Virus record (IMG/VR): IMGVR_UViG_3300046005_000547
Span: 1-64,000 of that record
Direction: 5' to 3' (one strand)
Length of the DNA: 64,000 bases
A program made the position numbers and the translations under genes. Below, in pieces: positions 3,178 to 55,871 of the stretch (within the stretch, counting starts at the first letter, position 1; every line of letters starts with the position of its first letter). The notes beneath the pieces are model-generated. The model was given only the letters and a program-made list of their open reading frames with translations, did no database searches and was not told the DNA's origin.

Positions 3178-4656
3178 TTATAATGATTTGTTGACGAGTT
3201 GTCTAATTTCAGCCAACGTTGTTTCCTTGACCAATTTTCCATCTTTGAATACAACTTCTAAACATCCATGTTTTTCTTGTTTTGCATCAACGTCGTCATT
3301 CAATGTATATTGTCCATTTTCATGAGATACCATCAACAATCCTTTGGCAGATTTTTTGGTTCCATCAGAATCCGTTTTTGGGTCTTTGAAAATTGGTTTA
3401 CCAACTCCATTAACCTTGACGTATGTGGACTTAAACGCAATTCCGAAACTATCTCTTGAGACCATTCCGTAAGTGTACGATCCTACTCCAAATACAATAT
3501 TGTTGGACGCAAATCCTTTTTCCATCAATTTTCGTAGGATAGTGTCCTGACGTTCTAATGTAATTGAATCACCATAGATTGCTCCGATATGTGGGTCTAA
3601 TTCTTTATATCCTTTTGAATTAATTGTACCACCGAATGTTTCCCATAAACATTCAATCAATCCTTTTTGTTCTGGAGATCTACCATTCAATACAGAATAT
3701 GTTCCGCAGATAATATCAACAGGATCCCCCGAATCTGGGCGGATTGTAAGTTTCCCGTTACGATTCATGATTGTATCTTTTAATGCGGGTAGATACTCCG
3801 TAACTAATTGCCAGAAGTCCCACGAATCGGAAACCATTGAGAAGATTCCATCTGGATAAACATCTTCAATTAAATGACGGATTGATTCCAATTCATTTTC
3901 AACTCCGTAAGAAGTCTGGGTACTATGTTCCGAGGCGGGAACCGAGCAACCAACCAATTCTTCATCGATGTTTGCTCCATAATAATCTTCAGCCAATTCA
4001 ATAGCTGGTAATGTATCAGTACCAACAGAACCCATTGCCAATACAGCAAACCCAGATACAGCAGCAGATTGTCTATTCTGCATACCTCTCATACTAAAAT
4101 CATGATTCTGAAATGGAACAAACGAATTATCATTACATGTTAATTCTGAATACTTCAAACTGGTTTTCTTGAATTCCATGTAACGTGTTGCCGAAGCGAT
4201 TCCAAGCCACATTTCACAACTCAATACAGTTTCAATGTAATTAGTCAACCAGAAGAACTCTGGGATATTATTGATTACAGTCAACAAAGGAACTTTAAAA
4301 GGAACAAACGAACCCTCTGGTAATGCTTTGATTGTGATTGGCAAATATCCCAAATCATGTAATACTCCGATATGCGATACATCAACATCAGAATTCAACA
4401 TTTTATCAACAAATCGTTTGTATCGTTTTACGACTTGGTCTCTTGGTTTAGAAAAGAATGATGTATTCCATTCATCAATTAGATATTCCTTTACAAAATG
4501 TTGTAATCCAACAAAATAAACACCTTTACAATCTTTGATTCCTGAATGTTTACCAGAACGAGCGGTGAAGTTTGAATAAACGACTTCCGTACCTTGGATG
4601 TATTGTTTGATGTGTCCTAATTTATAAGCATCTGTTTGTAATAATGCGTTGTTCAT
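3178..4656 (-). CDS. nadV: nicotinamide phosphoribosyltransferase family (Nampt/NadV; Namat-like)
   Basis: TDAYKLGH, DFSMRG, SEHS, VSDSWD, IRPDSGDP, IYGDSIT, FGVGS motifs. Confidence 0.93.
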   Translation of the reverse strand: MNNALLQTDAYKLGHIKQYIQGTEVVYSNFTARSGKHSGIKDCKGVYFVGLQHFVKEYLIDEWNTSFFSKPRDQVVKRYKRFVDKMLNSDVDVSHIGVLHDLGYLPITIKALPEGSFVPFKVPLLTVINNIPEFFWLTNYIETVLSCEMWLGIASATRYMEFKKTSLKYSELTCNDNSFVPFQNHDFSMRGMQNRQSAAVSGFAVLAMGSVGTDTLPAIELAEDYYGANIDEELVGCSVPASEHSTQTSYGVENELESIRHLIEDVYPDGIFSMVSDSWDFWQLVTEYLPALKDTIMNRNGKLTIRPDSGDPVDIICGTYSVLNGRSPEQKGLIECLWETFGGTINSKGYKELDPHIGAIYGDSITLERQDTILRKLMEKGFASNNIVFGVGSYTYGMVSRDSFGIAFKSTYVKVNGVGKPIFKDPKTDSDGTKKSAKGLLMVSHENGQYTLNDDVDAKQEKHGCLEVVFKDGKLVKETTLAEIRQLVNKSL

Positions 4657-5098
4657 TTTACTGTTCCTTATTGTTGTGTTAAATTTGTTGAAACTTTGTA
4701 TTTTGGATTTACAATAGATTCTTTGATTCGATTGTATTCATCTAATGAAATTTGATTCGTTTTACCTTCTGATGTATGTAATGTAAAACTGTTACGAGAA
4801 ATCATATACACAATAATAGAAGGTTCTGACGAATCCTCGTCAAATTCAAATCCTTCAATTTTAGAATCTTTTAATACCAATGTTTTTGTTTTACAGTTAA
4901 ACGTTCTCATGATTTATTTCCTTTGTTTATTAAAAATGTGTTTTAGATTTCGATAACAAATTAAGAATGTCTACGTTTTTAATGGTTTCAACGCCAAACA
5001 ACGGTTGATTTAATTCAACTTTCTTAATTGGTTCATTCTTATTATCGTCTATCTTTTTGTAATAGTCAAGACATTCTTTAAATGTTATTGTATCCATT

Positions 5099-5491
5099 TT
5101 ACTTTCCTCGAACTTTTAATACCAATGATTTACACATTTCAAAAGTATATGCTAAACCAGCTCGATCGTCAAGTAAAACATTGAAGAATGGTTTTCTTGT
5201 TTTAAACAAAGGAGATTCATTAACGTAATCGGGAACAATACCAATTGATTTACAATATTCAACAGCTTCCTGCAATTCATTCCCTTCTCTACATGTAAAC
5301 AGAATCAACTTACAATTAATTGATTTGAGATCATGTAACAATTTAACCATCTCAGGAAACGTATCCCCTAATCCATGTACATCATAAATTGTATTGTCGA
5401 AATCGAATCCAATGTATAATGAACCATGTTTTTTATATTCTTCCAATAATCGTTGGAACGCCGTTGTATCGCTTAAAAATCTATCTTGCAT
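5099..5491 (-). CDS. HAD-superfamily hydrolase
   Basis: FDFDNT motif I, LFTCRE, LLDDRA; likely start MQDRFL with GGAG upstream. Confidence 0.75.
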   Translation of the reverse strand: MQDRFLSDTTAFQRLLEEYKKHGSLYIGFDFDNTIYDVHGLGDTFPEMVKLLHDLKSINCKLILFTCREGNELQEAVEYCKSIGIVPDYVNESPLFKTRKPFFNVLLDDRAGLAYTFEMCKSLVLKVRGK

Positions 5492-5492
5492 A

Positions 5493-5702
5493 TTATACTC
5501 CGAAAACATCATTAACAAATAAACGAGGATCTTCATTTTCATCATCATAGAACGAATTTGTTGTGATAATTAAATCAATACCATCATCAAACAATACATC
5601 TAATCCTTTTGAGAAGATTCCATGTGTTGCGTACAAATACACTTTACCAACATTACGTTGTTTCAACACTTTGACAATTTCTTGGAAGGTTCTACCACCG
5701 TC
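5493..5702 (-). pseudogene. stranded original 3' end of prs (69 codons, no start codon)
   Basis: Translates DGGRTFQEIVKVLKQRNVGKVYLYATHGIFSKGLDVLFDDGIDLIITTNSF...*; 34 of 51 residues identical to the C-terminus of ORF 6688-7542. Confidence 0.9.
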
Positions 5703-5745
5703 GTATTAAATAATTTTATCATAATTTATATAAAAGGAAAAAGTA

Positions 5746-6687
5746 ATGGAAAATTTAAAAGATTTTTTATATCAACAATTATCATCCAAATCTAAAAATA
5801 ATTTTTACACTAAGCGATATATCAATTTCATGATTTCTAGAAACGATAAACCAAAAAATGTATATACGGAATTGCATCATATTTTACCAAAAGCGAAAAC
5901 TCAATTTCCAGAATATAAAAATCTTGTAAAATACCCTTGGAATGGGATCGAATTAACTGGACAAGAACATTTTATAGCACATTGGTTATTATGGAAATCG
6001 CAAGGCGGTTTTATGGCATACGCATTTATTGGTATGAGAAGGTGTAATGATTATCAAACTGATAGATATTTTAAAATTAATGGAAAATCGTACGAAAAAT
6101 TAAAAGAAGATGCATCTGCTGCGCAATCTAATAGAATAATTTTAGAATCCACCAGACAAAAGATTTCCATATCAAATAAATCTAGACCAAAAGGTGTGTG
6201 TCCTCATTGTAATATAGAAATGGATATTTCTAATTTAAAAAAATACCATTTAGATAATTGTAAAGTTTTTACTGGTAAATTGGTTCATGATATTAAACAA
6301 AATTTAGAAATAGGGAATTGTCCTCATTGTGGATTAGAAGGTAAAATGCAAGGATTATTGGCAACCCATTTTGACCATTGTCCAAAAATAAATAATTCTA
6401 GGAAAATAACTAAATTTTTTGATTGTCCTCATTGTAATAAAACTTTACCAGATACGCAAAATGTTAGAAATTTACATTTTGATAATTGTACTGTTTTCAC
6501 GGGTATTAAAAGAGAACCTAGTGATAAATTTAAAGCAGCAAATTCAAAAAGAGGTAAACCTGGGGTACCTAAACCAAAAATACAATGCCCTCATTGTAAT
6601 CATATAGGCACCCCAAAACGTATGTTACAAAATCATTTTGATAATTGCATTGCTAAAACAGATTCTAATTTAGATAATTTTATGTAA
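5746..6687 (+). mobile_element. free-standing HNH homing endonuclease with four CxxC-H-C Zn-finger repeats
   Basis: YTELHHILPK...EHFIAHWLLWK HNH domain; four CPHC...H(L/F)D(N/H)C repeats; inverted relative to neighbouring genes. Confidence 0.85.
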
Positions 6688-7542
6688 CTAATTAAAAATT
6701 TCAATAATATGCAATCTTTCATGGTTTGAATTTTCTATAAAAGAATTTGTCGTAATGATTTTACATATACCTGAATCTAAAATTGGAATGATTCCAATAT
6801 CAAAAATTCCATGAGTTACGTAAAGATATATTTTACCAACATTTCTTTGTGATAGAATTTTAGATATTTCGATAAAAGTTCTACCACCTGAACAGATGTC
6901 GTCTACAATCAATACGTCTTTACCATTGAAATCATCTCTATACACTTCTGTTCTGATGATATGACCGGACGAATCCCTTTCTTTATTTGCTTGGACAACA
7001 TCCAATGAAAGTTTAGATGCCAATTTGTAAATCTTTTTAGATGCACCAAAATCTGGCGATAATAACACTAGATTATCTAAATTGATTTTATCATCCAATT
7101 CATCAATACATTCAGAAGCAATTTGGTATTGTTCAATGTTGATAATGTTATCAAATAAAGCCAGAGATGTATCTGAATGTACATCAAATGTAACAATTCG
7201 ATTGTAATTTTGATTGTTGATTAAATCAGCAAACACTTTCAATGATAATGATTCGCCGTCGTCAGACACTTTATCTTGTCTAGCATACGGTAAATAAGGA
7301 GTGACCAATGTTAATGGTATCTTAGAACCATAATGTAATCTTAATGCGTTTGTTACCATCAACAATTCCATGATGTCATCAGATGATTTAAGTCTGGTCT
7401 GAATTTCAACTTCATATACATTTTTTGGAGTATTCTTCAATTGTACATGAACTTCTCCACCAGAGAATTTGAAGAAATTAACATCTTTCAATACTGCATT
7501 AGATGAATCATCTGTTAGAAAATTTAAACTTACGATACTCAT
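6688..7542 (-). CDS. prs: ribose-phosphate pyrophosphokinase family (Prs; Adps-like)
   Basis: FSGGEVHV, PYLPYARQD, FDVHS, SPDFGA, IVDDICSGGRT, VTHGIF. Confidence 0.92.
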   Translation of the reverse strand: MSIVSLNFLTDDSSNAVLKDVNFFKFSGGEVHVQLKNTPKNVYEVEIQTRLKSSDDIMELLMVTNALRLHYGSKIPLTLVTPYLPYARQDKVSDDGESLSLKVFADLINNQNYNRIVTFDVHSDTSLALFDNIINIEQYQIASECIDELDDKINLDNLVLLSPDFGASKKIYKLASKLSLDVVQANKERDSSGHIIRTEVYRDDFNGKDVLIVDDICSGGRTFIEISKILSQRNVGKIYLYVTHGIFDIGIIPILDSGICKIITTNSFIENSNHERLHIIEIFN

Positions 7543-7596
7543 ATATGTTCCTATAATGTAAAATTAAACAGCAAGGTAATTATAATGTAATTCTGT

Positions 7597-7637
7597 AAAA
7601 AGAAAATGGAATCTAAGACATAATCCTAGATTCCATT
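7597..7637 (-). terminator. intrinsic terminator after terD
   Basis: aatggaatcta/tagattccatt stem followed by a T-run on the minus strand. Confidence 0.7.
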
Positions 7638-7641
7638 CATA

Positions 7642-8217
7642 TTAGATATAGATACCAAATTGATTAGCCAACGCTTTCAATCCACCAGAATATCCTTGAC
7701 CAACTGCTTTGAATTTCCATTCATTATTGTATCGATAAACTTCGCCAAAAATCATGGCAGTCTCAGACGACGCACCTTCCGTTAAATCATAACGTAAGAT
7801 TTCAACGCCAGTGTCTTGGTTAATCAATCGAATATACGCATTATTGACTTGACCGAAGTTCTGACGACGTTGTTCTGCTTCATGGATTGTAACAGTAATA
7901 CTAAATTTATCAACATCTTTATGTGCGAGATTCAATTTGATTACAATTTGTTCATCATCTCCGTCACCAGAACCCGTTAGATTATCGCCAAGATGTTCTG
8001 TTGAACCATCAACTGATTTCAATTGATTATAGAAGATAAAATCCGAGTCAGAACGCGTCTTACCATTTGTCAATAAGAAAGCCGACGCATCCAAATCAAA
8101 CGGAGCCCCATCAGTTGTTCTGGCATCCCAACCTAATCCAACAACGATATTGGTTAATGATGGATCGATTTTTGTTAAAGATAAGTTGTTACCTTTTGTT
8201 AATGTTAAAGATGTCAT
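7642..8217 (-). CDS. terD: TerD-family stress protein
   Basis: LGWD...FDLDASAF...FIFYNQ...[15 protein letters not shown]...WKFKAVGQG. Confidence 0.92.
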
Positions 8218-8226
8218 GATATATTC

Positions 8227-8964
8227 CTATAGATAAGATTTTGAAATTGTTGATACGATGTCGTTTAATGTTACATCGTTGGTTGAGTCACCGATTGCGT
8301 TGAATTTCCATTCATTGTTATGTTTATACAATTTACCAAGAATCATTGAAACTTTATTTTTAAATGTATCGTCTTTAGAGATGTTATAACCGGCAAGAAC
8401 GAAATCTACTCTAGACGGTGTTCCTTCATAGATTCTAATTGACGCAAAAGGAATGTCATTGAATTTTTGACCTCTGTAAGAATTCAATACAACAAAGATT
8501 TGGTCAACATCTGGTTTCAATTCGTTTAATTTAATTGAGATGATTTCATTATCTAATCCATCATCTCCGTTTGAATCACCAACTAAATCATCACCAGAAT
8601 GTGTAATTCCTTTACCTCTTAGATTACCAAAATAGATTAGTTCATCTTTCACTTTGTTTTTAAATGTAATACAACTTACATCTAAATCAACAGCTGTTCT
8701 TCCAATCATACCCCAATTCACGCCAACGCAGATATTGGTTAAAGATTTTCCATCTTTTTCTAATGTAATACGTTGTCCTTTAACCAATGTCAATTTTGGT
8801 TGAACTTGTTGTTTCTGTTTTTCCTGTAGAGCAGCTTTTGTTGCTTCAACAGATGTTTCAATGTTATCGATAACATTTCTAATTGTATTAAAAATACTCA
8901 TGTTCGGATTCTCCGGATTTAAAATTTTGATAAAACAGACGTCATGTTGAATGTAAATTCGCAT
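8227..8964 (-). CDS. TerD/TerZ-like protein with N-terminal coiled coil
   Basis: GVNWG, DLDVSC, GDDLVGDSNGDDGLDNEII, WKFNAIG; probable start at 8901 (MSIFN). Confidence 0.85.
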   Translation of the reverse strand: MRIYIQHDVCFIKILNPENPNMSIFNTIRNVIDNIETSVEATKAALQEKQKQQVQPKLTLVKGQRITLEKDGKSLTNICVGVNWGMIGRTAVDLDVSCITFKNKVKDELIYFGNLRGKGITHSGDDLVGDSNGDDGLDNEIISIKLNELKPDVDQIFVVLNSYRGQKFNDIPFASIRIYEGTPSRVDFVLAGYNISKDDTFKNKVSMILGKLYKHNNEWKFNAIGDSTNDVTLNDIVSTISKSYL

Positions 8965-9281
8965 TCAGTATCATTCACAATACCGATTGACATCATTCTA
9001 GTTTTTGGTAGATAAGGTGAAACTTGTGTGTTCTTGAAAACAATCAAAGCATTTGTCCAATTACATCCATCTTCAGAAACTTCAAGTTTAACTGTGAATG
9101 ATTTGTTGACTGAAGAAGCTCTTTCAAGCAATTCTTTAATTGGATGAGCTTGATGTCTGTTGTCTTCTTTGATAATCATTTCAAGAACTTTGTTTTTGTT
9201 TAATTTTGATGCGTTCATTTTATACCACCTTTGTAATTGATTTAGATTGATTTAAGTTCATTGGATTCTTCCAACTTGAAA

Positions 9282-9314
9282 TCTATTATAATGATTTTTC
9301 TTATCATCGAAAGA
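9282..9314 (-). promoter_or_regulatory. early-type promoter TCTTTCGA-N16-TATAATAGA
   Basis: exact motif, one of 7 copies, upstream of a gene start. Confidence 0.8.
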
Positions 9315-9893
9315 AAAATCTTATTAAATTTTAAACAAAAAGAAACCCCAATTCCTAAGAACTGAGGTTTTTGATTATTCTAATTTGAACTTGGTCAATA
9401 ATTGGACGAATTGTACATATTCATCATCTGTTAATTCACCAATTGCTTTATCCAATAGATACGTTGTACTGAAATAGAACAGATTGTTATCTTCATCATA
9501 AAATTCTAATTCGGATTTCATGTCATTGTATAATACTCTATTCATTTTCGAACACCTCATGTATATAATGTAACATTATATAAGAATCGGTTATGTCTGC
9601 TCCATCAACTAGATAAATCGATTTGGATTCATCAATTCCATATACAGAAATCTCAGTTCCTTCCAATTCAACTACCACGGTATCATTCTTCTTGATAACA
9701 TCTAAACATACATCAACTTTCATTTCTTTTACCGTAATCTAAAATAGTGCATTCGCAAATATATAAATTGTATGAACAAATCAACAATGCTTCTTTAATC
9801 CGTTCCGGCGTCATCTTTTCAATAATCTTTGCCCTGTATAATGCATCATTATTACAACCCGTTAATATCAACAACGATAACAATAAAATAAAT

Positions 9894-37281: not shown

Positions 37282-38082
37282 ATGTTAAACATAAAACAAT
37301 TGTTCGCGCAATATGGTGTAATAGTGAAAGAATCAAAATATCTTAAAATATATGAATCTTTAATGAATTCTCCTCCTGATACAGAAGGATATACCGAAAC
37401 GCATCATATAATACCAAAATGTATTTCTAACGATAACAAAAAATCTAATTTAATTGAAATTTCAGGAAGAAAACATTTTATATGTCATTACTTGTTATGT
37501 AAAATACTTGAAAAAGATACAAAATTTTGGTATAAATTAAATCACGCATTTATTAGATTTGGTTCGAATAATCTAAGTGGTAGATATTATAATTCTAGAT
37601 TATATGAATCTAAACGTAAAAATTTCTCTTCGGTTATGTCAAAATGTCAATCCGGTGAATTAAATTCACAATACGGTAAAATATGGATTTGTCATCCATA
37701 TTCAATTAAACCAACCATAATTTCACCAAATATGTTTGATGAATACTATAATCAAGGATGGTTATTAGGTAGGACAATAAAACATCCAAAAATTAAAAAA
37801 ATTTCTAAACGCGAAATGGAAAATTATGTAGATCCATATAAAGAAAGAGCATTAAAAACAATTTCTTTATTTTTATCTGGTGAATTTTATTCGATAAAAG
37901 AATTTGTAGAAACATCCAATGACAACACTTTAACAGTAAGCAATTTATCTGTACTATGGAGTTCAAAATTTCCTGATTATAAATCGTTCGCAAAATCAAA
38001 TATGGGTGTTAGGAAATCTTCAAAATATTGTAGAGAGTTCCTAAATCATTTAATTGACGACAAATTTATAGAATTAAATTAA
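37282..38082 (+). mobile_element. free-standing HNH homing endonuclease
   Basis: YTETHHIIPK...HFICHYLL..., SQYGKIWICH (NUMOD-like); inverted relative to neighbours. Confidence 0.85.
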
Positions 38083-53407: not shown

Positions 53408-54667
53408 ATGGAAATTTTAGACTTGTTATTATCAAAATCGTGTAATGTACATTATGTAAAACGATATTACAAATTTATAAATTATTGCAAAGAACAAAAT
53501 AAAAATTTAATTGACGAATATACAGAAACACACCACATTTTACCAAAAGCAGAAGATTTGTTTCCGGAGTATGAAAATTTAAAAGAATATCCTTGGAATT
53601 ATATAGAATTGACATTTAAACAACATTTAATCGCTCATGTTATTTTATGGAAATCTTATAAAGGATCCCAATCAATGGCATTAGAATGTATGTTGGGTAA
53701 TTTTAATTCAGAAACAAATTCATTATTATCTCATAGAAAAATACCAACTAAAACTAAATTACAATTTTTAGATAAAGTTAAAAAAGACGCAAACCTTAGA
53801 AGAAGTGTAGTCCAACAAGGATATGCAACATATAAAGATTCATCCGATAACAAATACTTCTTACATTATTCGGATCCAAAGATACAAGAATTGAATTTGG
53901 TTGGTAATAATACTGGATTATTACATTCCGAAGACACAAAATTAAAAATGTCTGAATCTAAATTGAAATATAGAATGGTTGAATTATTTTTCTTAGATAA
54001 TTCAGTTAATGTTAGATTGATGTCGCCAGAATATGTTGAATACCTTAATCAAGGATGGGTTGTTGGATTAACAGGAGAAGATAGAACATATCGAGATGGA
54101 TTGAAATATGAAAAGGTTTCTGCTTCAATGGAAAATAGATATGCATATTTGTACCCTAATGGAGATTATTATGGTTATATTAACATAGACGATCCTGTGA
54201 TTAAAGAAATAGGATTGATACAGAAACCAAAGACTGATAAACAGATGGAACAATATGAATCTATTTCAAGGATGGGTGCAGAATACAACAAAAATAAATG
54301 TGCATATAATAATGGAGAAATTGAACGTAATTATACTCCAGGAACTGAACCAGAAGGATGGGTTAAAGGGGGATTGACTAGAAAACCGTATGAGATTGTT
54401 GTAACTCAAAATGGTTCAACTATGTGGAATGATGGTGTTAAAAATTATAGAATAAAAGATGGAGAATTCCCTAAAGAAGGGTGGATTCGAGGTATAATAA
54501 CTAAAAAACGAGATAAACCTGTACATAATAAAAATAAGGTAAAGATTGTAAATATCAAAGATAAAACAGATTATAGATTTATCGTTTTGGATGAACATTA
54601 TGAATTACCAGAAGGTTATAAATTTTGTAATAATAAAAATATCTCTAGATTAAAGAAAAGTATATAA
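53408..54667 (+). mobile_element. HNH homing endonuclease
   Basis: YTETHHILPK...HLIAHVILWK; repeated NNG/NDG..PEGW DNA-binding modules. Confidence 0.85.
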
Positions 54668-54686: not shown

Positions 54687-55871
54687 ATGAGATTTTATAT
54701 TATGGAAAGTGAATTTACACCAAGAAGATTATACATTAAACAACATTCTGTTACTGGAATGAGATACTTTGGACAGACTGTATCTGAAGATATAGACAAA
54801 TACAAAGGTTCAGGAACGTATTGGGTTAGACATATTAAGAAACATGGAGTTGAACATGTAATCAACGAATGGATTTCAGAATGGTTCTATGAACCAGAAA
54901 CAATAAGTGATTTTGCTTTAGAATTTTCCGAACAATATGATATTGTAAATTCAAAAGAATGGGCTAATTTAATTCCAGAAGATGGTCTAGGTGGATGGGA
55001 TAGATTTAATGATATTAGAGGGAATTACGATGAAGATTTAGCATTTATTCGTATGAAAGAAAATGGAACATATGAAGGATGGTTGGAAAAGATAACAATC
55101 GCATCAACTGGAGAAAATAATCCAGCATATGGTACAAAATGGATATTCAATCCTGATATTCCAAATTCCAGCAAATTATTATATTCTGGAGAAGAATTAC
55201 CAGAAGGATATTTGTTTGGTATGGATTTCGAACGCAGACAAAAGATGGTTGAATCTAATGTTGGTAAAAATTTAGGTTCTAAATTATATTACAACCCAGA
55301 AACATTAGAAACAGTTAGAATACAATTAAATCAACAAATACCAGAAGGATATATTAATGGTATTGGTATGACGGAAGAACAAAGAACAGAATGGTCTGGA
55401 GATCGTTCTGGTGAAAATAATGGCAATTATGGAAAACATCCATATTATAATTATGAAACTGATGAAATAATGTATTTTGAATCGGACGAAACTGCTCAAG
55501 AAGGATTCACCAAAGGATTACCATCAACCCAATATAATAGTATTAGAGGAGAAAATAATCCAAAATATGGTAGTGATTGGTATTATCATCCCGTAACTAT
55601 GCATGAATTTTTAATGAATCTTAAAGATAAACATTTGTATCCTGAATACATTAAAGGTAGACCATCAAATTCATCGGATGAACGTAAAGCAAAATTAAAA
55701 GCAGCAAGAGCAAATTCTGCGATATCCTTTAAAGGACAAGCACAAATTGTTAACATAAACGATTCAAAAGATATAAAATGGTTTGACGTAGTTAATGAAT
55801 ATGAACTACCAGAAGGATATAAATTTAGAAATGAGAAAAATGCTTTGAAATTAAAGAAAAGAGATGTATAA
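54687..55871 (+). mobile_element. GIY-YIG (Seg-like) homing endonuclease
   Basis: LYIKQH..TGMRYFGQT...YKGSGTYW...WANL; GENNP repeats. Confidence 0.85.

What the first reader, a model, noticed from the sequence alone, without database searches (positions are those of the whole stretch)
5493..6895. Homing endonuclease cassette that swaps in a new 3' end for prs and strands the old one
Seen: prs (6688-7542) ends with ...DDIC-SGGRTFIEISKIL...TTNSF. Its stop codon abuts the stop of an inverted HNH gene. Just beyond the HNH start lies a start-less copy of the same segment, DGGRTFQEIVKVL...TTNSF (34/51 identical), whose stop sits 1 nt from the next gene's ATG, as expected for the original gene end. 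The breakpoint is exactly in the PRPP-binding DDICDGG motif, and the live copy is recoded there (D to S). There are only ~45 nt between the HNH and the remnant and no group I features, so this is not an intron. Inference: a non-splicing mobile cassette that cuts prs at its conserved motif and repairs the gene with its own cleavage-resistant C-terminus. A similar 3'-end replacement is known from fungal mitochondria (e.g. Allomyces atp6); I do not know of one in a phage NAD gene.
Basis: partly seen in the sequence, partly recalled or inferred. Interest (0 to 1): 0.85.

Follow-up and report, generated by a model that had tools for sequence, protein, structure and literature searches.

The report
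Homing endonuclease cassette replacing a gene end
A selfish nuclease gene in an uncultivated T4-like phage sits inside a prs-like NAD-pathway gene without breaking it, because it carries its own substitute for the gene's last 67 codons and leaves the original end stranded beside it; this trick is known from fungal mitochondria, and here it proves recurrent in phages.

Summary
The prs-like gene (6688-7542, minus strand) is full length. A Mob-type HNH homing endonuclease gene (5746-6687, plus strand) abuts its stop codon. A start-less copy of the last 69 codons (5493-5702) lies 43 nt beyond the nuclease start.

The stranded copy matches the nuclease-free relative L003 as well as the rest of the gene does (about 70% nt identity, same pS and pN). 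The live end is far more diverged (57% nt, saturated synonymous sites, 24.5% GC).

All nine nuclease lineages with readable context lie tail-to-tail with prs. Three independent loci carry remnants (window, L004, L091/L092), and each starts exactly at the Asp codon of DGG(R/A)T. A near-isogenic filled/empty pair (L092 against L177 and L175) shows a clean 1269-nt insertion between the Cys and Asp codons.

Live alleles are non-consensus at the motif in 8 of 9 lineages. No intron RNA was detected.

The same nuclease domain flanks partial duplicates of Namat/nadV, phoH, topoisomerase II, queD and others. This is the phage counterpart of the mitochondrial "mORF" gene hybrids. Cleavage, resistance and absence of splicing remain untested.

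The parts
6892..7542 (-). Resident 5' part of the prs-like (Prs/Adps family) gene, codons 1-217, ending ...IVDDIC
   Evidence: ORF and translation. Pfam Pribosyltran_N and Pribosyltran. 68.4% aa and 69.6% nt identity to nuclease-free L003, pS 0.616, pN 0.221. The boundary is placed by analogy with the L092/L177 alignment.
6688..6891 (-). Replacement 3' end of prs carried by the cassette, codons 218-284 plus TAG. It begins with the recoded Ser codon TCA (SGGRTF instead of DGGRTF).
   Evidence: In frame with the upstream part. Only 56.7% aa and 57.2% nt identity to L003, pS 0.87; GC 24.5% against 31.6% upstream. Less like 86 of 96 family members than the remnant is.
5746..6687 (+). Free-standing Mob-type HNH homing endonuclease gene (313 aa), convergent with prs: an N-terminal nuclease domain followed by five CPHC...HFDNC zinc-finger repeats
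   Evidence: phrog_655 at 5e-34. Conserved E42, H44, H45, N66, H75, H79. The N-domain model has pLDDT 84 and gives BFVD hits to MobE and MobD-like endonucleases, TM 0.6-0.76. The C-terminal array resembles CTCF zinc-finger arrays. All full-length relatives lie at prs 3' ends.
5703..5745 (.). 43-nt cassette spacer between the nuclease ATG and the remnant. It holds the nuclease's Shine-Dalgarno sequence (AAGGA) on the + strand and the in-frame TAA that closes the remnant frame on the - strand.
   Evidence: Sequence. No homology to prs upstream of the remnant. No promoter signal above chance.
5493..5702 (-). Stranded original 3' end of prs (69 codons plus TAA). It has no start codon and ends 1 nt before the ATG of the next gene.
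   Evidence: E 4e-23 to the live end. 70.6% aa and nt identity to L003, pS 0.615, pN 0.207, the same as the resident 5' part. It has the same stop, 1 nt, ATG junction as in L003.
5099..5491 (-). Downstream neighbour, a HAD-type phosphatase-like gene whose true start is the ATG at 5491. It marks the original end of the prs locus.
   Evidence: Homologue directly follows prs in L003. NF046079 and phrog_1238. 74.4% nt identity to L003.
3178..4656 (-). NAMPT/Namat-like gene, the likely pathway partner of the prs-like gene. Context only; it is not part of the cassette.
   Evidence: PF04095 and PF18127. The Prs-like plus Nampt-like pair is NARP1 (bioRxiv 10.1101/2024.02.11.579819).

Best explanation
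The segment 5703-6891 (1189 nt) is a splicing-independent homing cassette. It consists of a Mob-type HNH homing endonuclease gene in inverted orientation plus a foreign, diverged copy of the last 67 codons of the prs-like gene.

Inferred mechanism: the nuclease recognises the DNA that encodes the diphosphate-binding loop DDIC-DGGRT in cassette-free alleles. Its tandem zinc fingers probably do the reading. It cuts at or next to the Cys|Asp codon boundary. Recombinational repair in this T4-like phage then copies the cassette from a co-infecting donor.

The cassette brings its own in-frame gene end, so the enzyme stays whole without an intron or intein. The first cassette codons are changed (Asp to Ser here), which should destroy the target and protect the carrier. 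The resident 3' end is pushed downstream, where it loses its start and stays as a silent remnant still attached to the next gene. The remnant is a by-product that can also serve as the right-hand homology arm for further homing. With time it is deleted, which gives the remnant-free arrangement seen in most lineages.

Shown: the anatomy, the foreign origin of the live end, the native origin of the remnant, the exact and recurrent insertion point, the presence/absence polymorphism, and the association with motif changes.

Inferred: the cleavage site, the resistance of the recoded allele, the repair pathway, and the silence of the remnant.
For: - Anatomy.
- Native remnant, foreign live end: the remnant is 70.6% identical to nuclease-free L003, the live end 56.7%, the upstream part 68.4%. 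NG86 gives remnant pS 0.615 / pN 0.207, upstream part 0.616 / 0.221, live end 0.87 / 0.306. GC is 24.5% (live end), 28.0% (nuclease), 31.6% and 32.9% (resident parts). The remnant is closer than the live end to 86 of 96 family members, and the reverse holds in 6.
- Same synteny junction (stop, 1 nt, ATG) in L003.
- All 9 nuclease lineages with context are convergent with the prs 3' end.
- Three independent remnants (window, L004, L091/92) all start at the Asp codon, with no homology upstream.
- Near-isogenic pair: the L091 prs N-part is 99% identical to nuclease-free P0113 and P0119, whose C-ends match the remnant at 84-92% and the live end at 60-66%.
- In the DNA alignment the live copy is identical to the empty alleles up to TGT and diverges from the next codon. 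Remnant homology resumes at the Asp codon.
- Motif DGG occurs in 112 of 119 database relatives but in only 1 of 9 nuclease-linked live alleles, Fisher p = 4e-8.
- The L004-L005 pair has nuclease 71%, prs C-end 73.5% and prs N-part 49% identity.
- No intron family detected.
- The nuclease keeps its catalytic residues and folds like Mob endonucleases.
- The same architecture occurs at other genes with the same nuclease domain.
Against: - No cleavage, expression or splicing data exist.
- Five of eight nuclease lineages with both flanks readable have no remnant (L005, L010, L169, L171, L173), so insertion with stranding is not the only outcome.
- One nuclease-linked allele (L171) keeps the consensus DGGRT.
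- Across eight lineages, nuclease similarity does not correlate with similarity of the live prs end (rho 0.17, n.s.), so long-term co-transfer is not demonstrated.
- For the window itself the only nuclease-free relative is 30% diverged. The exact left boundary is therefore inferred from L092.
- The lineages in the Fisher test are not fully independent.
- No PDB fold match and no Pfam HNH match for the nuclease domain.
Confidence: 0.8

Rival explanations
1. Ordinary free-standing endonuclease with co-conversion. The nuclease lives in the intergenic space downstream of prs, as T4 seg and mob genes do. It cuts prs at a distance, and repair co-converts the prs 3' end. The remnant is a rare accident of illegitimate end joining with no role, so there is no precisely bounded cassette.
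For: Five of eight lineages with both flanks readable have no remnant, and the nuclease simply lies between prs and the next gene. [quoted passage not shown]
Against: Three independent remnants share the same first codon. In L092 both edges of the foreign DNA fall at one and the same codon boundary, and the left flank is identical to the empty alleles right up to it, with no graded co-conversion tract. This model differs from the best explanation mainly in emphasis: whether the remnant is a functional homology arm or an accident.
Confidence: 0.12
2. In-situ tandem duplication of the prs 3' end, with a nuclease gene landing between the copies later. The live copy then diverged quickly, for example under selection for resistance.
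For: The two copies are homologous and in the same orientation. In L092 a patch of about 45 nt near the 3' end is shared by the live copy and the remnant against the empty alleles, which shows that the copies can exchange sequence.
Against: The live end differs from the remnant at pS 0.62 and from L003 at pS 0.87, and it has a different GC content, while the remnant shows no excess divergence. In L092 the flanks are 89-94% identical to the empty alleles, yet the live end is only 60-66% identical at the protein level. That much divergence cannot have arisen in place.
Confidence: 0.03
3. The insert is an intron (group I or II) or another bypassed element. The mature product joins codon 217 to the remnant, and the in-frame 'live' end is incidental.
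For: The insertion lies in a conserved active-site motif, as is typical of mobile introns. Phage HNH insertions in nadV-like genes have been described as introns (PMC7344957).
Against: No Rfam intron or other RNA family was found at E <= 1 in 4500-8500, or at gathering score in L092, L004 and L003. The nuclease is on the opposite strand. Only 43 nt of non-coding DNA are available. The live end is a complete, profile-matching C-terminus with its own stop.
Confidence: 0.03

Closest known systems
Mitochondrial mobile-ORF (mORF) gene hybrids: Allomyces macrogynus atp6; Glomus sp. atp6, atp9, cox2, nad3; Rhizopus atp9; Mortierella cox2 (Paquin et al. 1994 as cited in PMC3630166; also PMC6279837)
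   Same: An endonuclease ORF is inserted in a protein-coding gene without an intron. It brings a foreign in-frame C-terminal segment, and the native C-terminus is kept downstream as a duplicate. The native copy matches ORF-less relatives better than the inserted copy does. This is the logic found here.
   Different: The genome here is a phage, not an organelle. The nuclease is a Mob-type HNH domain with a zinc-finger array, not LAGLIDADG or GIY-YIG. The nuclease gene is inverted and convergent rather than co-oriented or in phase. The target is an NAD-pathway or anti-defence enzyme motif. Mirror-image 5'-end replacements also occur (L003 nadV, L101 topoisomerase).
T4 free-standing Mob and Seg homing endonucleases and intronless homing (MobE, SegF, SegG; PMC2790892, PMC2988022)
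   Same: Same nuclease fold family (BFVD hits to MobE and MobD-like) and a T4-like phage host (major capsid protein 61% identical to T4-like cyanomyoviruses). The gene is free-standing, targets a conserved neighbouring gene, and is expected to spread by double-strand-break repair with co-conversion.
   Different: T4 examples sit between intact genes, and no stranded duplicate of the target gene is described. The term 'duplicat' is absent from the T4 mobile-DNA review. Here the insertion point is inside the coding sequence, and the gene end is replaced.
Genes split by endonuclease insertion without splicing: Aeh1 nrdA/mobE; Pectobacterium phage CB7 nicotinamide phosphoribosyltransferase/HNH CB7_245 (PMC3045599, PMC7344957)
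   Same: An HNH endonuclease gene lies inside a phage metabolic gene with no splicing. The NAD-pathway genes prs and nadV are the hosts.
   Different: In those cases the gene is cut into two complementary pieces that must reassemble. Here nothing is split: one full-length gene plus a redundant dead end.
NARP1 NAD+ reconstitution operon (Adps plus Namat) of phages (bioRxiv 10.1101/2024.02.11.579819; PMC13586617)
   Same: A Prs-family gene (PF14572) lies next to a Nampt-family gene. The breakpoint falls in the loop equivalent to the Adps PP loop, Cys215-Ser220, which binds the ATP phosphates.
   Different: This concerns the identity of the host gene, not the mobile element. Adps activity was not tested here. 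The best PDB sequence matches are cellular PRPP synthetases.

Membership tests
Mob-type HNH free-standing homing endonuclease | HNH (beta-beta-alpha-metal) catalytic motif and fold | tested here: met
   Conserved H44, H45, N66, H75, H79 in 20-21 sequences. The model has strands 42-45 and 67-70 and helix 72-86. Foldseek against BFVD matches MobE, MobD-like and 'HNHc' proteins, E down to 1.7e-8, TM 0.6-0.76. phrog_655 and phrog_12434 match. Caveat: no Pfam HNH hit and no PDB hit.
Mob-type HNH free-standing homing endonuclease | Not embedded in an intron or intein; has its own start and ribosome-binding site | tested here: met
   No Rfam family. It lies on the opposite strand to the host gene and has AAGGA 7 nt upstream of its ATG.
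Mob-type HNH free-standing homing endonuclease | Presence/absence polymorphism between related genomes at the same locus | tested here: met
   Window against L003. L092 against L177 and L175 at 89-94% flank identity.
Mob-type HNH free-standing homing endonuclease | Site-specific cleavage of the nuclease-free allele and super-Mendelian inheritance | not testable with these tools
   Needs enzyme assays and phage crosses.
mORF-type gene hybrid (endonuclease cassette with replacement gene end) | Foreign C-terminal segment in frame with the native upstream part, giving a full-length product | tested here: met
   Single 284-aa ORF. TIGR01251 covers residues 13-282.
mORF-type gene hybrid (endonuclease cassette with replacement gene end) | Native C-terminus retained downstream and closer to ORF-less relatives than the inserted one | tested here: met
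   window; L091/L092.
mORF-type gene hybrid (endonuclease cassette with replacement gene end) | Native remnant not part of the mature mRNA or protein | not testable with these tools
   An in-frame TAA precedes it and it has no start codon. Expression was not measured.
mORF-type gene hybrid (endonuclease cassette with replacement gene end) | Endonuclease ORF co-oriented or in phase with the host gene, as in Allomyces and Glomus atp6 | tested here: not met
   The nuclease gene is inverted and convergent in all nine prs-linked lineages.
Group I or group II intron carrying an endonuclease gene | Ribozyme core recognisable by covariance models | tested here: not met
   No hit at E <= 1 in 4500-8500, and none at gathering score in L092, L004 and L003.
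Split gene (genes-in-pieces, Aeh1 nrdA type) | Two complementary, non-overlapping gene pieces on either side of the endonuclease | tested here: not met
   The pieces overlap completely: the remnant duplicates residues 218-284 of an already complete gene.
NARP1 Adps (host gene identity) | Prs-family protein encoded within ten genes of a Nampt/Namat homologue in a phage | tested here: met
   prs-like gene at 6688-7542 and NAMPT-like gene at 3178-4656.
NARP1 Adps (host gene identity) | Pyrophosphorylates ADP-ribose rather than ribose-5-phosphate | not testable with these tools
   Biochemical assay needed.

The most novel reading that the evidence does not exclude
Phages harbour a general, so far undescribed class of 'exon-carrying' intron-less homing cassettes. 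Mob-type HNH nucleases with interchangeable DNA-binding modules insert at the DNA that encodes active-site motifs: the Adps/Prs PP loop, the Namat WLPITSATR motif, the PhoH Walker B motif, topoisomerase II, QueD and a P-loop kinase. They keep the gene alive by bringing a substitute 3' or 5' gene end. The stranded native end serves as the homology arm for the next homing event. This would make homing endonucleases a routine engine of chimeric enzyme formation in phage auxiliary and anti-defence genes, and a weapon against cassette-free competitors.
Probability: 0.55. Interest if true: 0.7.

Novelty: new variant of a known kind. Interest (0 to 1): 0.62.

Why it matters
It shows a third way, besides introns/inteins and gene splitting, for a homing endonuclease to occupy the most conserved part of a phage gene without killing it: it brings a spare gene end.

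The precisely bounded empty/filled pairs found here make target site, immunity and homing directly testable with a PCR product and one expressed protein.

[quoted passage not shown] The cassettes therefore reshuffle active-site segments of an anti-defence system between phages.

Stranded gene ends next to nuclease genes are also a practical marker. They allow recent homing events to be dated, and they explain start-less pseudo-ORFs in phage annotation.

Tried and rejected
- Megablast of the locus against INPHARED phages found no match, so no close cultured relative exists. The best cultured prs is only 47% identical.
- Rfam at E <= 1 gave only two chance-level hits to eukaryotic families.
- Pfam and NCBIfam do not recognise the nuclease.
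- A PDB sequence profile search gave only weak zinc-finger matches.
- Foldseek against PDB gave only CTCF-like zinc-finger arrays for the whole model (E 1e-3, low TM) and nothing for the N-domain. Only the BFVD library identified the fold.
- The promoter and terminator scan found nothing above chance around the nuclease gene.
- I tested whether nuclease similarity predicts similarity of the live prs end across eight lineages. It does not (rho 0.17, n.s.).
- An exact-match search of IMG/VR for the reconstructed empty junction of this phage found nothing.
- An apparent extension of the L004 remnant upstream of the Asp codon (VFIA/SSL) is not above shuffled controls.
- The metagenome and IMG/VR scans with the nuclease alignment mostly returned proteins that share only the N-terminal nuclease domain. 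These turned out to be useful for the wider survey.
- The first regex count of motif variants was contaminated by an upstream DDF.GKD match. It was redone.
Full report
**1. What is there**

On the minus strand the window encodes a 284-aa Prs-family protein (6688-7542). It matches Pfam Pribosyltran_N, Pribosyltran and Pribosyl_synth. TIGR01251 scores 173 bits against a cutoff of 113 and covers residues 13-282.

Its TAG abuts the TAA of a 313-aa ORF on the plus strand (5746-6687). Forty-three nucleotides beyond that ORF's ATG, again on the minus strand, lies a frame of 69 codons plus stop (5493-5702). An in-frame TAA and one unrelated codon precede it. This frame repeats the last 67 residues of the live protein (38/67 identical, E 4e-23) and matches the prs family on its own (phrog_619, E 6e-16). 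Its stop is followed by one nucleotide and the ATG of a HAD-phosphatase-like gene.

**2. Which end is the original**

IMG/VR holds two contigs identical to the window (L001, L002) and one relative, L003, whose prs is 65% identical and has no nuclease gene. In L003 prs ends ...DDICDGGRTFQEIAKVLKQRNVGK... and is followed by one nucleotide and the ATG of the same HAD-like gene. This is the junction the window keeps at the end of its remnant.

| Comparison with L003 | aa identity | nt identity | pS | pN |
|---|---|---|---|---|
| Resident 5' part | 68.4% | 69.6% | 0.616 | 0.221 |
| Remnant | 70.6% | 70.6% | 0.615 | 0.207 |
| Live end | 56.7% | 57.2% | 0.87 | 0.306 |

GC content is 24.5% in the live end and 28.0% in the nuclease gene, against 31.6% and 32.9% in the resident parts. 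Across 96 database relatives the remnant is the closer copy in 86 and the live end in 6.

The remnant is therefore the native gene end, stranded recently enough to show no extra decay. The live end is foreign.

**3. The nuclease and its habit**

Pfam, NCBIfam and PDB sequence searches do not recognise the protein. PHROGs calls it a homing endonuclease. Twenty relatives conserve E42, H44, H45, N66, H75 and H79 in the N-terminal 130 residues, followed by four to six CPHC...HFDNC repeats.

An AlphaFold model of the N-domain (pLDDT 84) has a beta-beta-alpha core. It matches MobE, MobD-like and other T4-type HNH homing endonucleases in BFVD (E down to 1.7e-8, TM 0.6-0.76). It has no PDB match. The C-terminal array weakly resembles CTCF zinc-finger arrays.

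Every full-length relative for which context could be fetched lies tail-to-tail with a prs gene, abutting or overlapping its 3' end. That makes nine lineages: window, L004, L005-7, L009, L010, L091/92, L169/170, L171/172 and L173/174. This is a prs-specific endonuclease family.

**4. The insertion point is exact and recurrent**

Remnants are present in three independent lineages (window, L004, L091/L092). Their nucleases are 48-59% identical and their prs N-parts 41-48% identical. All three remnants begin at the Asp codon of DGG(R/A)T, and none has significant homology upstream.

L091/L092 has near-isogenic cassette-free counterparts. P0113 and P0119 (loci L175, L177) are 99% identical in the prs N-part. 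Their C-ends match the L091 remnant at 84-92% but its live end at only 60-66%. In the DNA alignment the live copy is identical to the empty alleles up to ...GAT GAT ATT TGT and diverges from the very next codon (TCA GGC GGT ATG against GAC GGT GGT CGC). Remnant homology resumes at the Asp codon.

The insert is thus a discrete 1269-nt block in L092, 1189 nt in the window and 1373 nt in L004. It sits between the Cys and Asp codons, as sharply bounded as an intron or intein. No intron RNA family is detectable in any of these loci.

**5. Recoding**

The live alleles linked to the nuclease read as follows:

| Live motif | Loci |
|---|---|
| SGGRT | window |
| SGGMT | L091 |
| DFGTT | L004, L005, L009 |
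| DYGRT | L010 |
| DYGNT | L173 |
| DGLRT | L169 |
| DGGRT | L171 |

Among 119 database relatives, 112 have DGG (Fisher p = 4e-8, lineages not fully independent). The changes cluster in the first three cassette codons. This fits a target that spans this site and immunity by recoding.

The loop corresponds to the PP loop (Cys215-Ser220) that binds the ATP phosphates in phage Adps (PMC13586617). Cleavage and resistance themselves are not shown.

**6. Limits**

- Five of the eight lineages with both flanks readable have no remnant (L005, L010, L169, L171, L173). Either it was deleted later, or repair used downstream homology. The remnant is therefore a by-product, possibly useful as a homology arm, and not a required part.
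- Nuclease similarity does not predict similarity of the live prs end across lineages (rho 0.17). Only L004-L005 shows the expected pattern (nuclease 71%, C-end 73.5%, N-part 49%).
- For the window itself, the left boundary rests on analogy with L092.

**7. Generality**

I scanned all fetched loci that carry this nuclease domain for protein-level duplicates on both sides of the nuclease gene. The same architecture appeared at other genes:

| Locus | Gene | Arrangement |
|---|---|---|
| L098, L029/30 | phoH | Convergent nuclease, remnant starting at the QN of the DEFQN Walker B motif |
| L162 | P-loop nucleotide kinase | Convergent nuclease, 3' remnant |
| L032 | queD/PTPS | Co-oriented nuclease, 3' remnant |
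| L101-106 | topoisomerase II large subunit | 5' fragment stranded |
| L031/111 | HD-domain gene | 5' fragment stranded |
| L003 | NAMPT/Namat-like partner gene | 5' fragment stranded |

In L003 a stranded 5' fragment (codons 1-160) is 85% identical to the window's gene. The live gene's N-part is 57% identical and the rest 69.5%. The break lies at WLPITSATR.

**8. Comparison with what is known**

The logic is that of the mitochondrial mORF gene hybrids (Allomyces atp6; Glomus atp6, atp9, cox2, nad3). There an endonuclease ORF brings a foreign C-terminus, and the native one stays downstream and matches ORF-less relatives (PMC3630166; PMC6279837).

The nuclease belongs to the T4 Mob family, and the phage is T4-like. 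Double-strand-break repair homing, as established for T4, is therefore the natural mechanism (PMC2988022).

I found no description of such stranded gene ends in phages in the T4 mobile-DNA review, the ICP1 nuclease survey or full-text searches. Phage cases described so far are introns, inteins, intergenic free-standing genes or split genes. The last group includes an unspliced HNH in the nadV-like gene of phage CB7.

The prs-like plus NAMPT-like pair most likely is NARP1, that is Adps plus Namat. The activity is untested.

**9. Verdict**

This is a new phage variant of a mechanism known from organelles, documented here with unusually clean empty/filled comparisons. It is apparently widespread.

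Noticed in passing
L003:6491-9767: Mirror-image event in the partner gene. A stranded 5' fragment of the NAMPT/Namat-like gene (6491-~6970) is 85% identical to the window's gene. It is followed by a co-oriented Mob-type HNH gene with a different DNA-binding domain (7011-8276), then a full-length gene (8286-9767) whose first 165 residues are only 57% identical to the window's. The break lies at the conserved WLPITSATR motif.
   Followed up: partly
L098:3741-5735; L029:3312-5412 (same arrangement in L030): phoH genes with the same architecture as the window: a convergent nuclease gene overlapping the live 3' end, and a start-less remnant of the last ~80 codons beside the nuclease start. The remnant begins at the QN of the DEFQN Walker B motif. 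The live copies read QSTS and QNSS there.
   Followed up: partly
L162:3627-5295; L032:3380-5135; L101:2085-5255 (also L102, L104-L106); L031:3482-4784 (also L111): Further partial duplicates flanking nuclease genes with the same N-domain: a P-loop nucleotide kinase (3' remnant of 114 aa), queD/PTPS (3' remnant, nuclease co-oriented), a topoisomerase II large subunit (5' fragment) and an HD-domain gene (5' fragment).
   Followed up: partly
L092:3655-3960 against L177 and L175:4560-4880: The first 12 nt of the L092 remnant carry 6 substitutions relative to the empty alleles (GAT GGC GGA GCT against GAC GGT GGT CGC), while the next ~35 nt are nearly identical. Near the 3' end, a patch of about 45 nt is shared by the live copy and the remnant against both empty alleles. 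This suggests a donor-derived junction and gene conversion between the two copies.
   Followed up: no
window 37282-38082 (+), 53408-54667 (+), 54687-55871 (+): Three more putative homing endonuclease genes. A Mob-like HNH lies beside the sliding-clamp and clamp-loader genes. A Mob-like HNH lies directly after the major capsid gene. Next to it is an ORF that resembles GIY-YIG nucleases by eye only; it had no NCBIfam hit and was not run against Pfam. No stranded gene fragments were detected around the two Mob-like genes. The third was not screened.
   Followed up: partly
window, whole 64 kb: TATAAATA, the T4 late-promoter consensus, is absent (0 found, 12 +/- 3.7 expected from shuffles). Its core TAAATA is depleted (35 observed, 87 expected), as are the AT-rich palindromes AATATT, ATTAAT, GATATC, TTTAAA and CAATTG.
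   Followed up: partly
L175:4946-7908 against L177:4946-6637; also L169:1674-3955: The NAMPT/Namat-like gene is intact in L177 (563 aa). In the near-isogenic L175 an extra 381-aa ORF interrupts it between the NAMPT_N and NAPRTase parts. In L169 it is split by a 152-aa ORF. This gives a second insertion hot spot in the same operon and recalls the unspliced HNH in the nadV-like gene of phage CB7.
   Followed up: no
window 5099-5548 (-): The mechanical ORF call of 149 aa for the HAD-like gene runs back into the prs remnant. Comparison with L003 places the real start at the ATG at 5491. The extra upstream codons overlap the remnant in another frame and are probably not coding.
   Followed up: partly
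L008:4001-4861 (protein P0037): A prs-like gene without an adjacent nuclease gene carries the SGG variant and a GIFDFG motif, like the window's live end. It may represent the kind of lineage from which resistant gene ends are drawn, or a former carrier that lost the nuclease gene.
   Followed up: no
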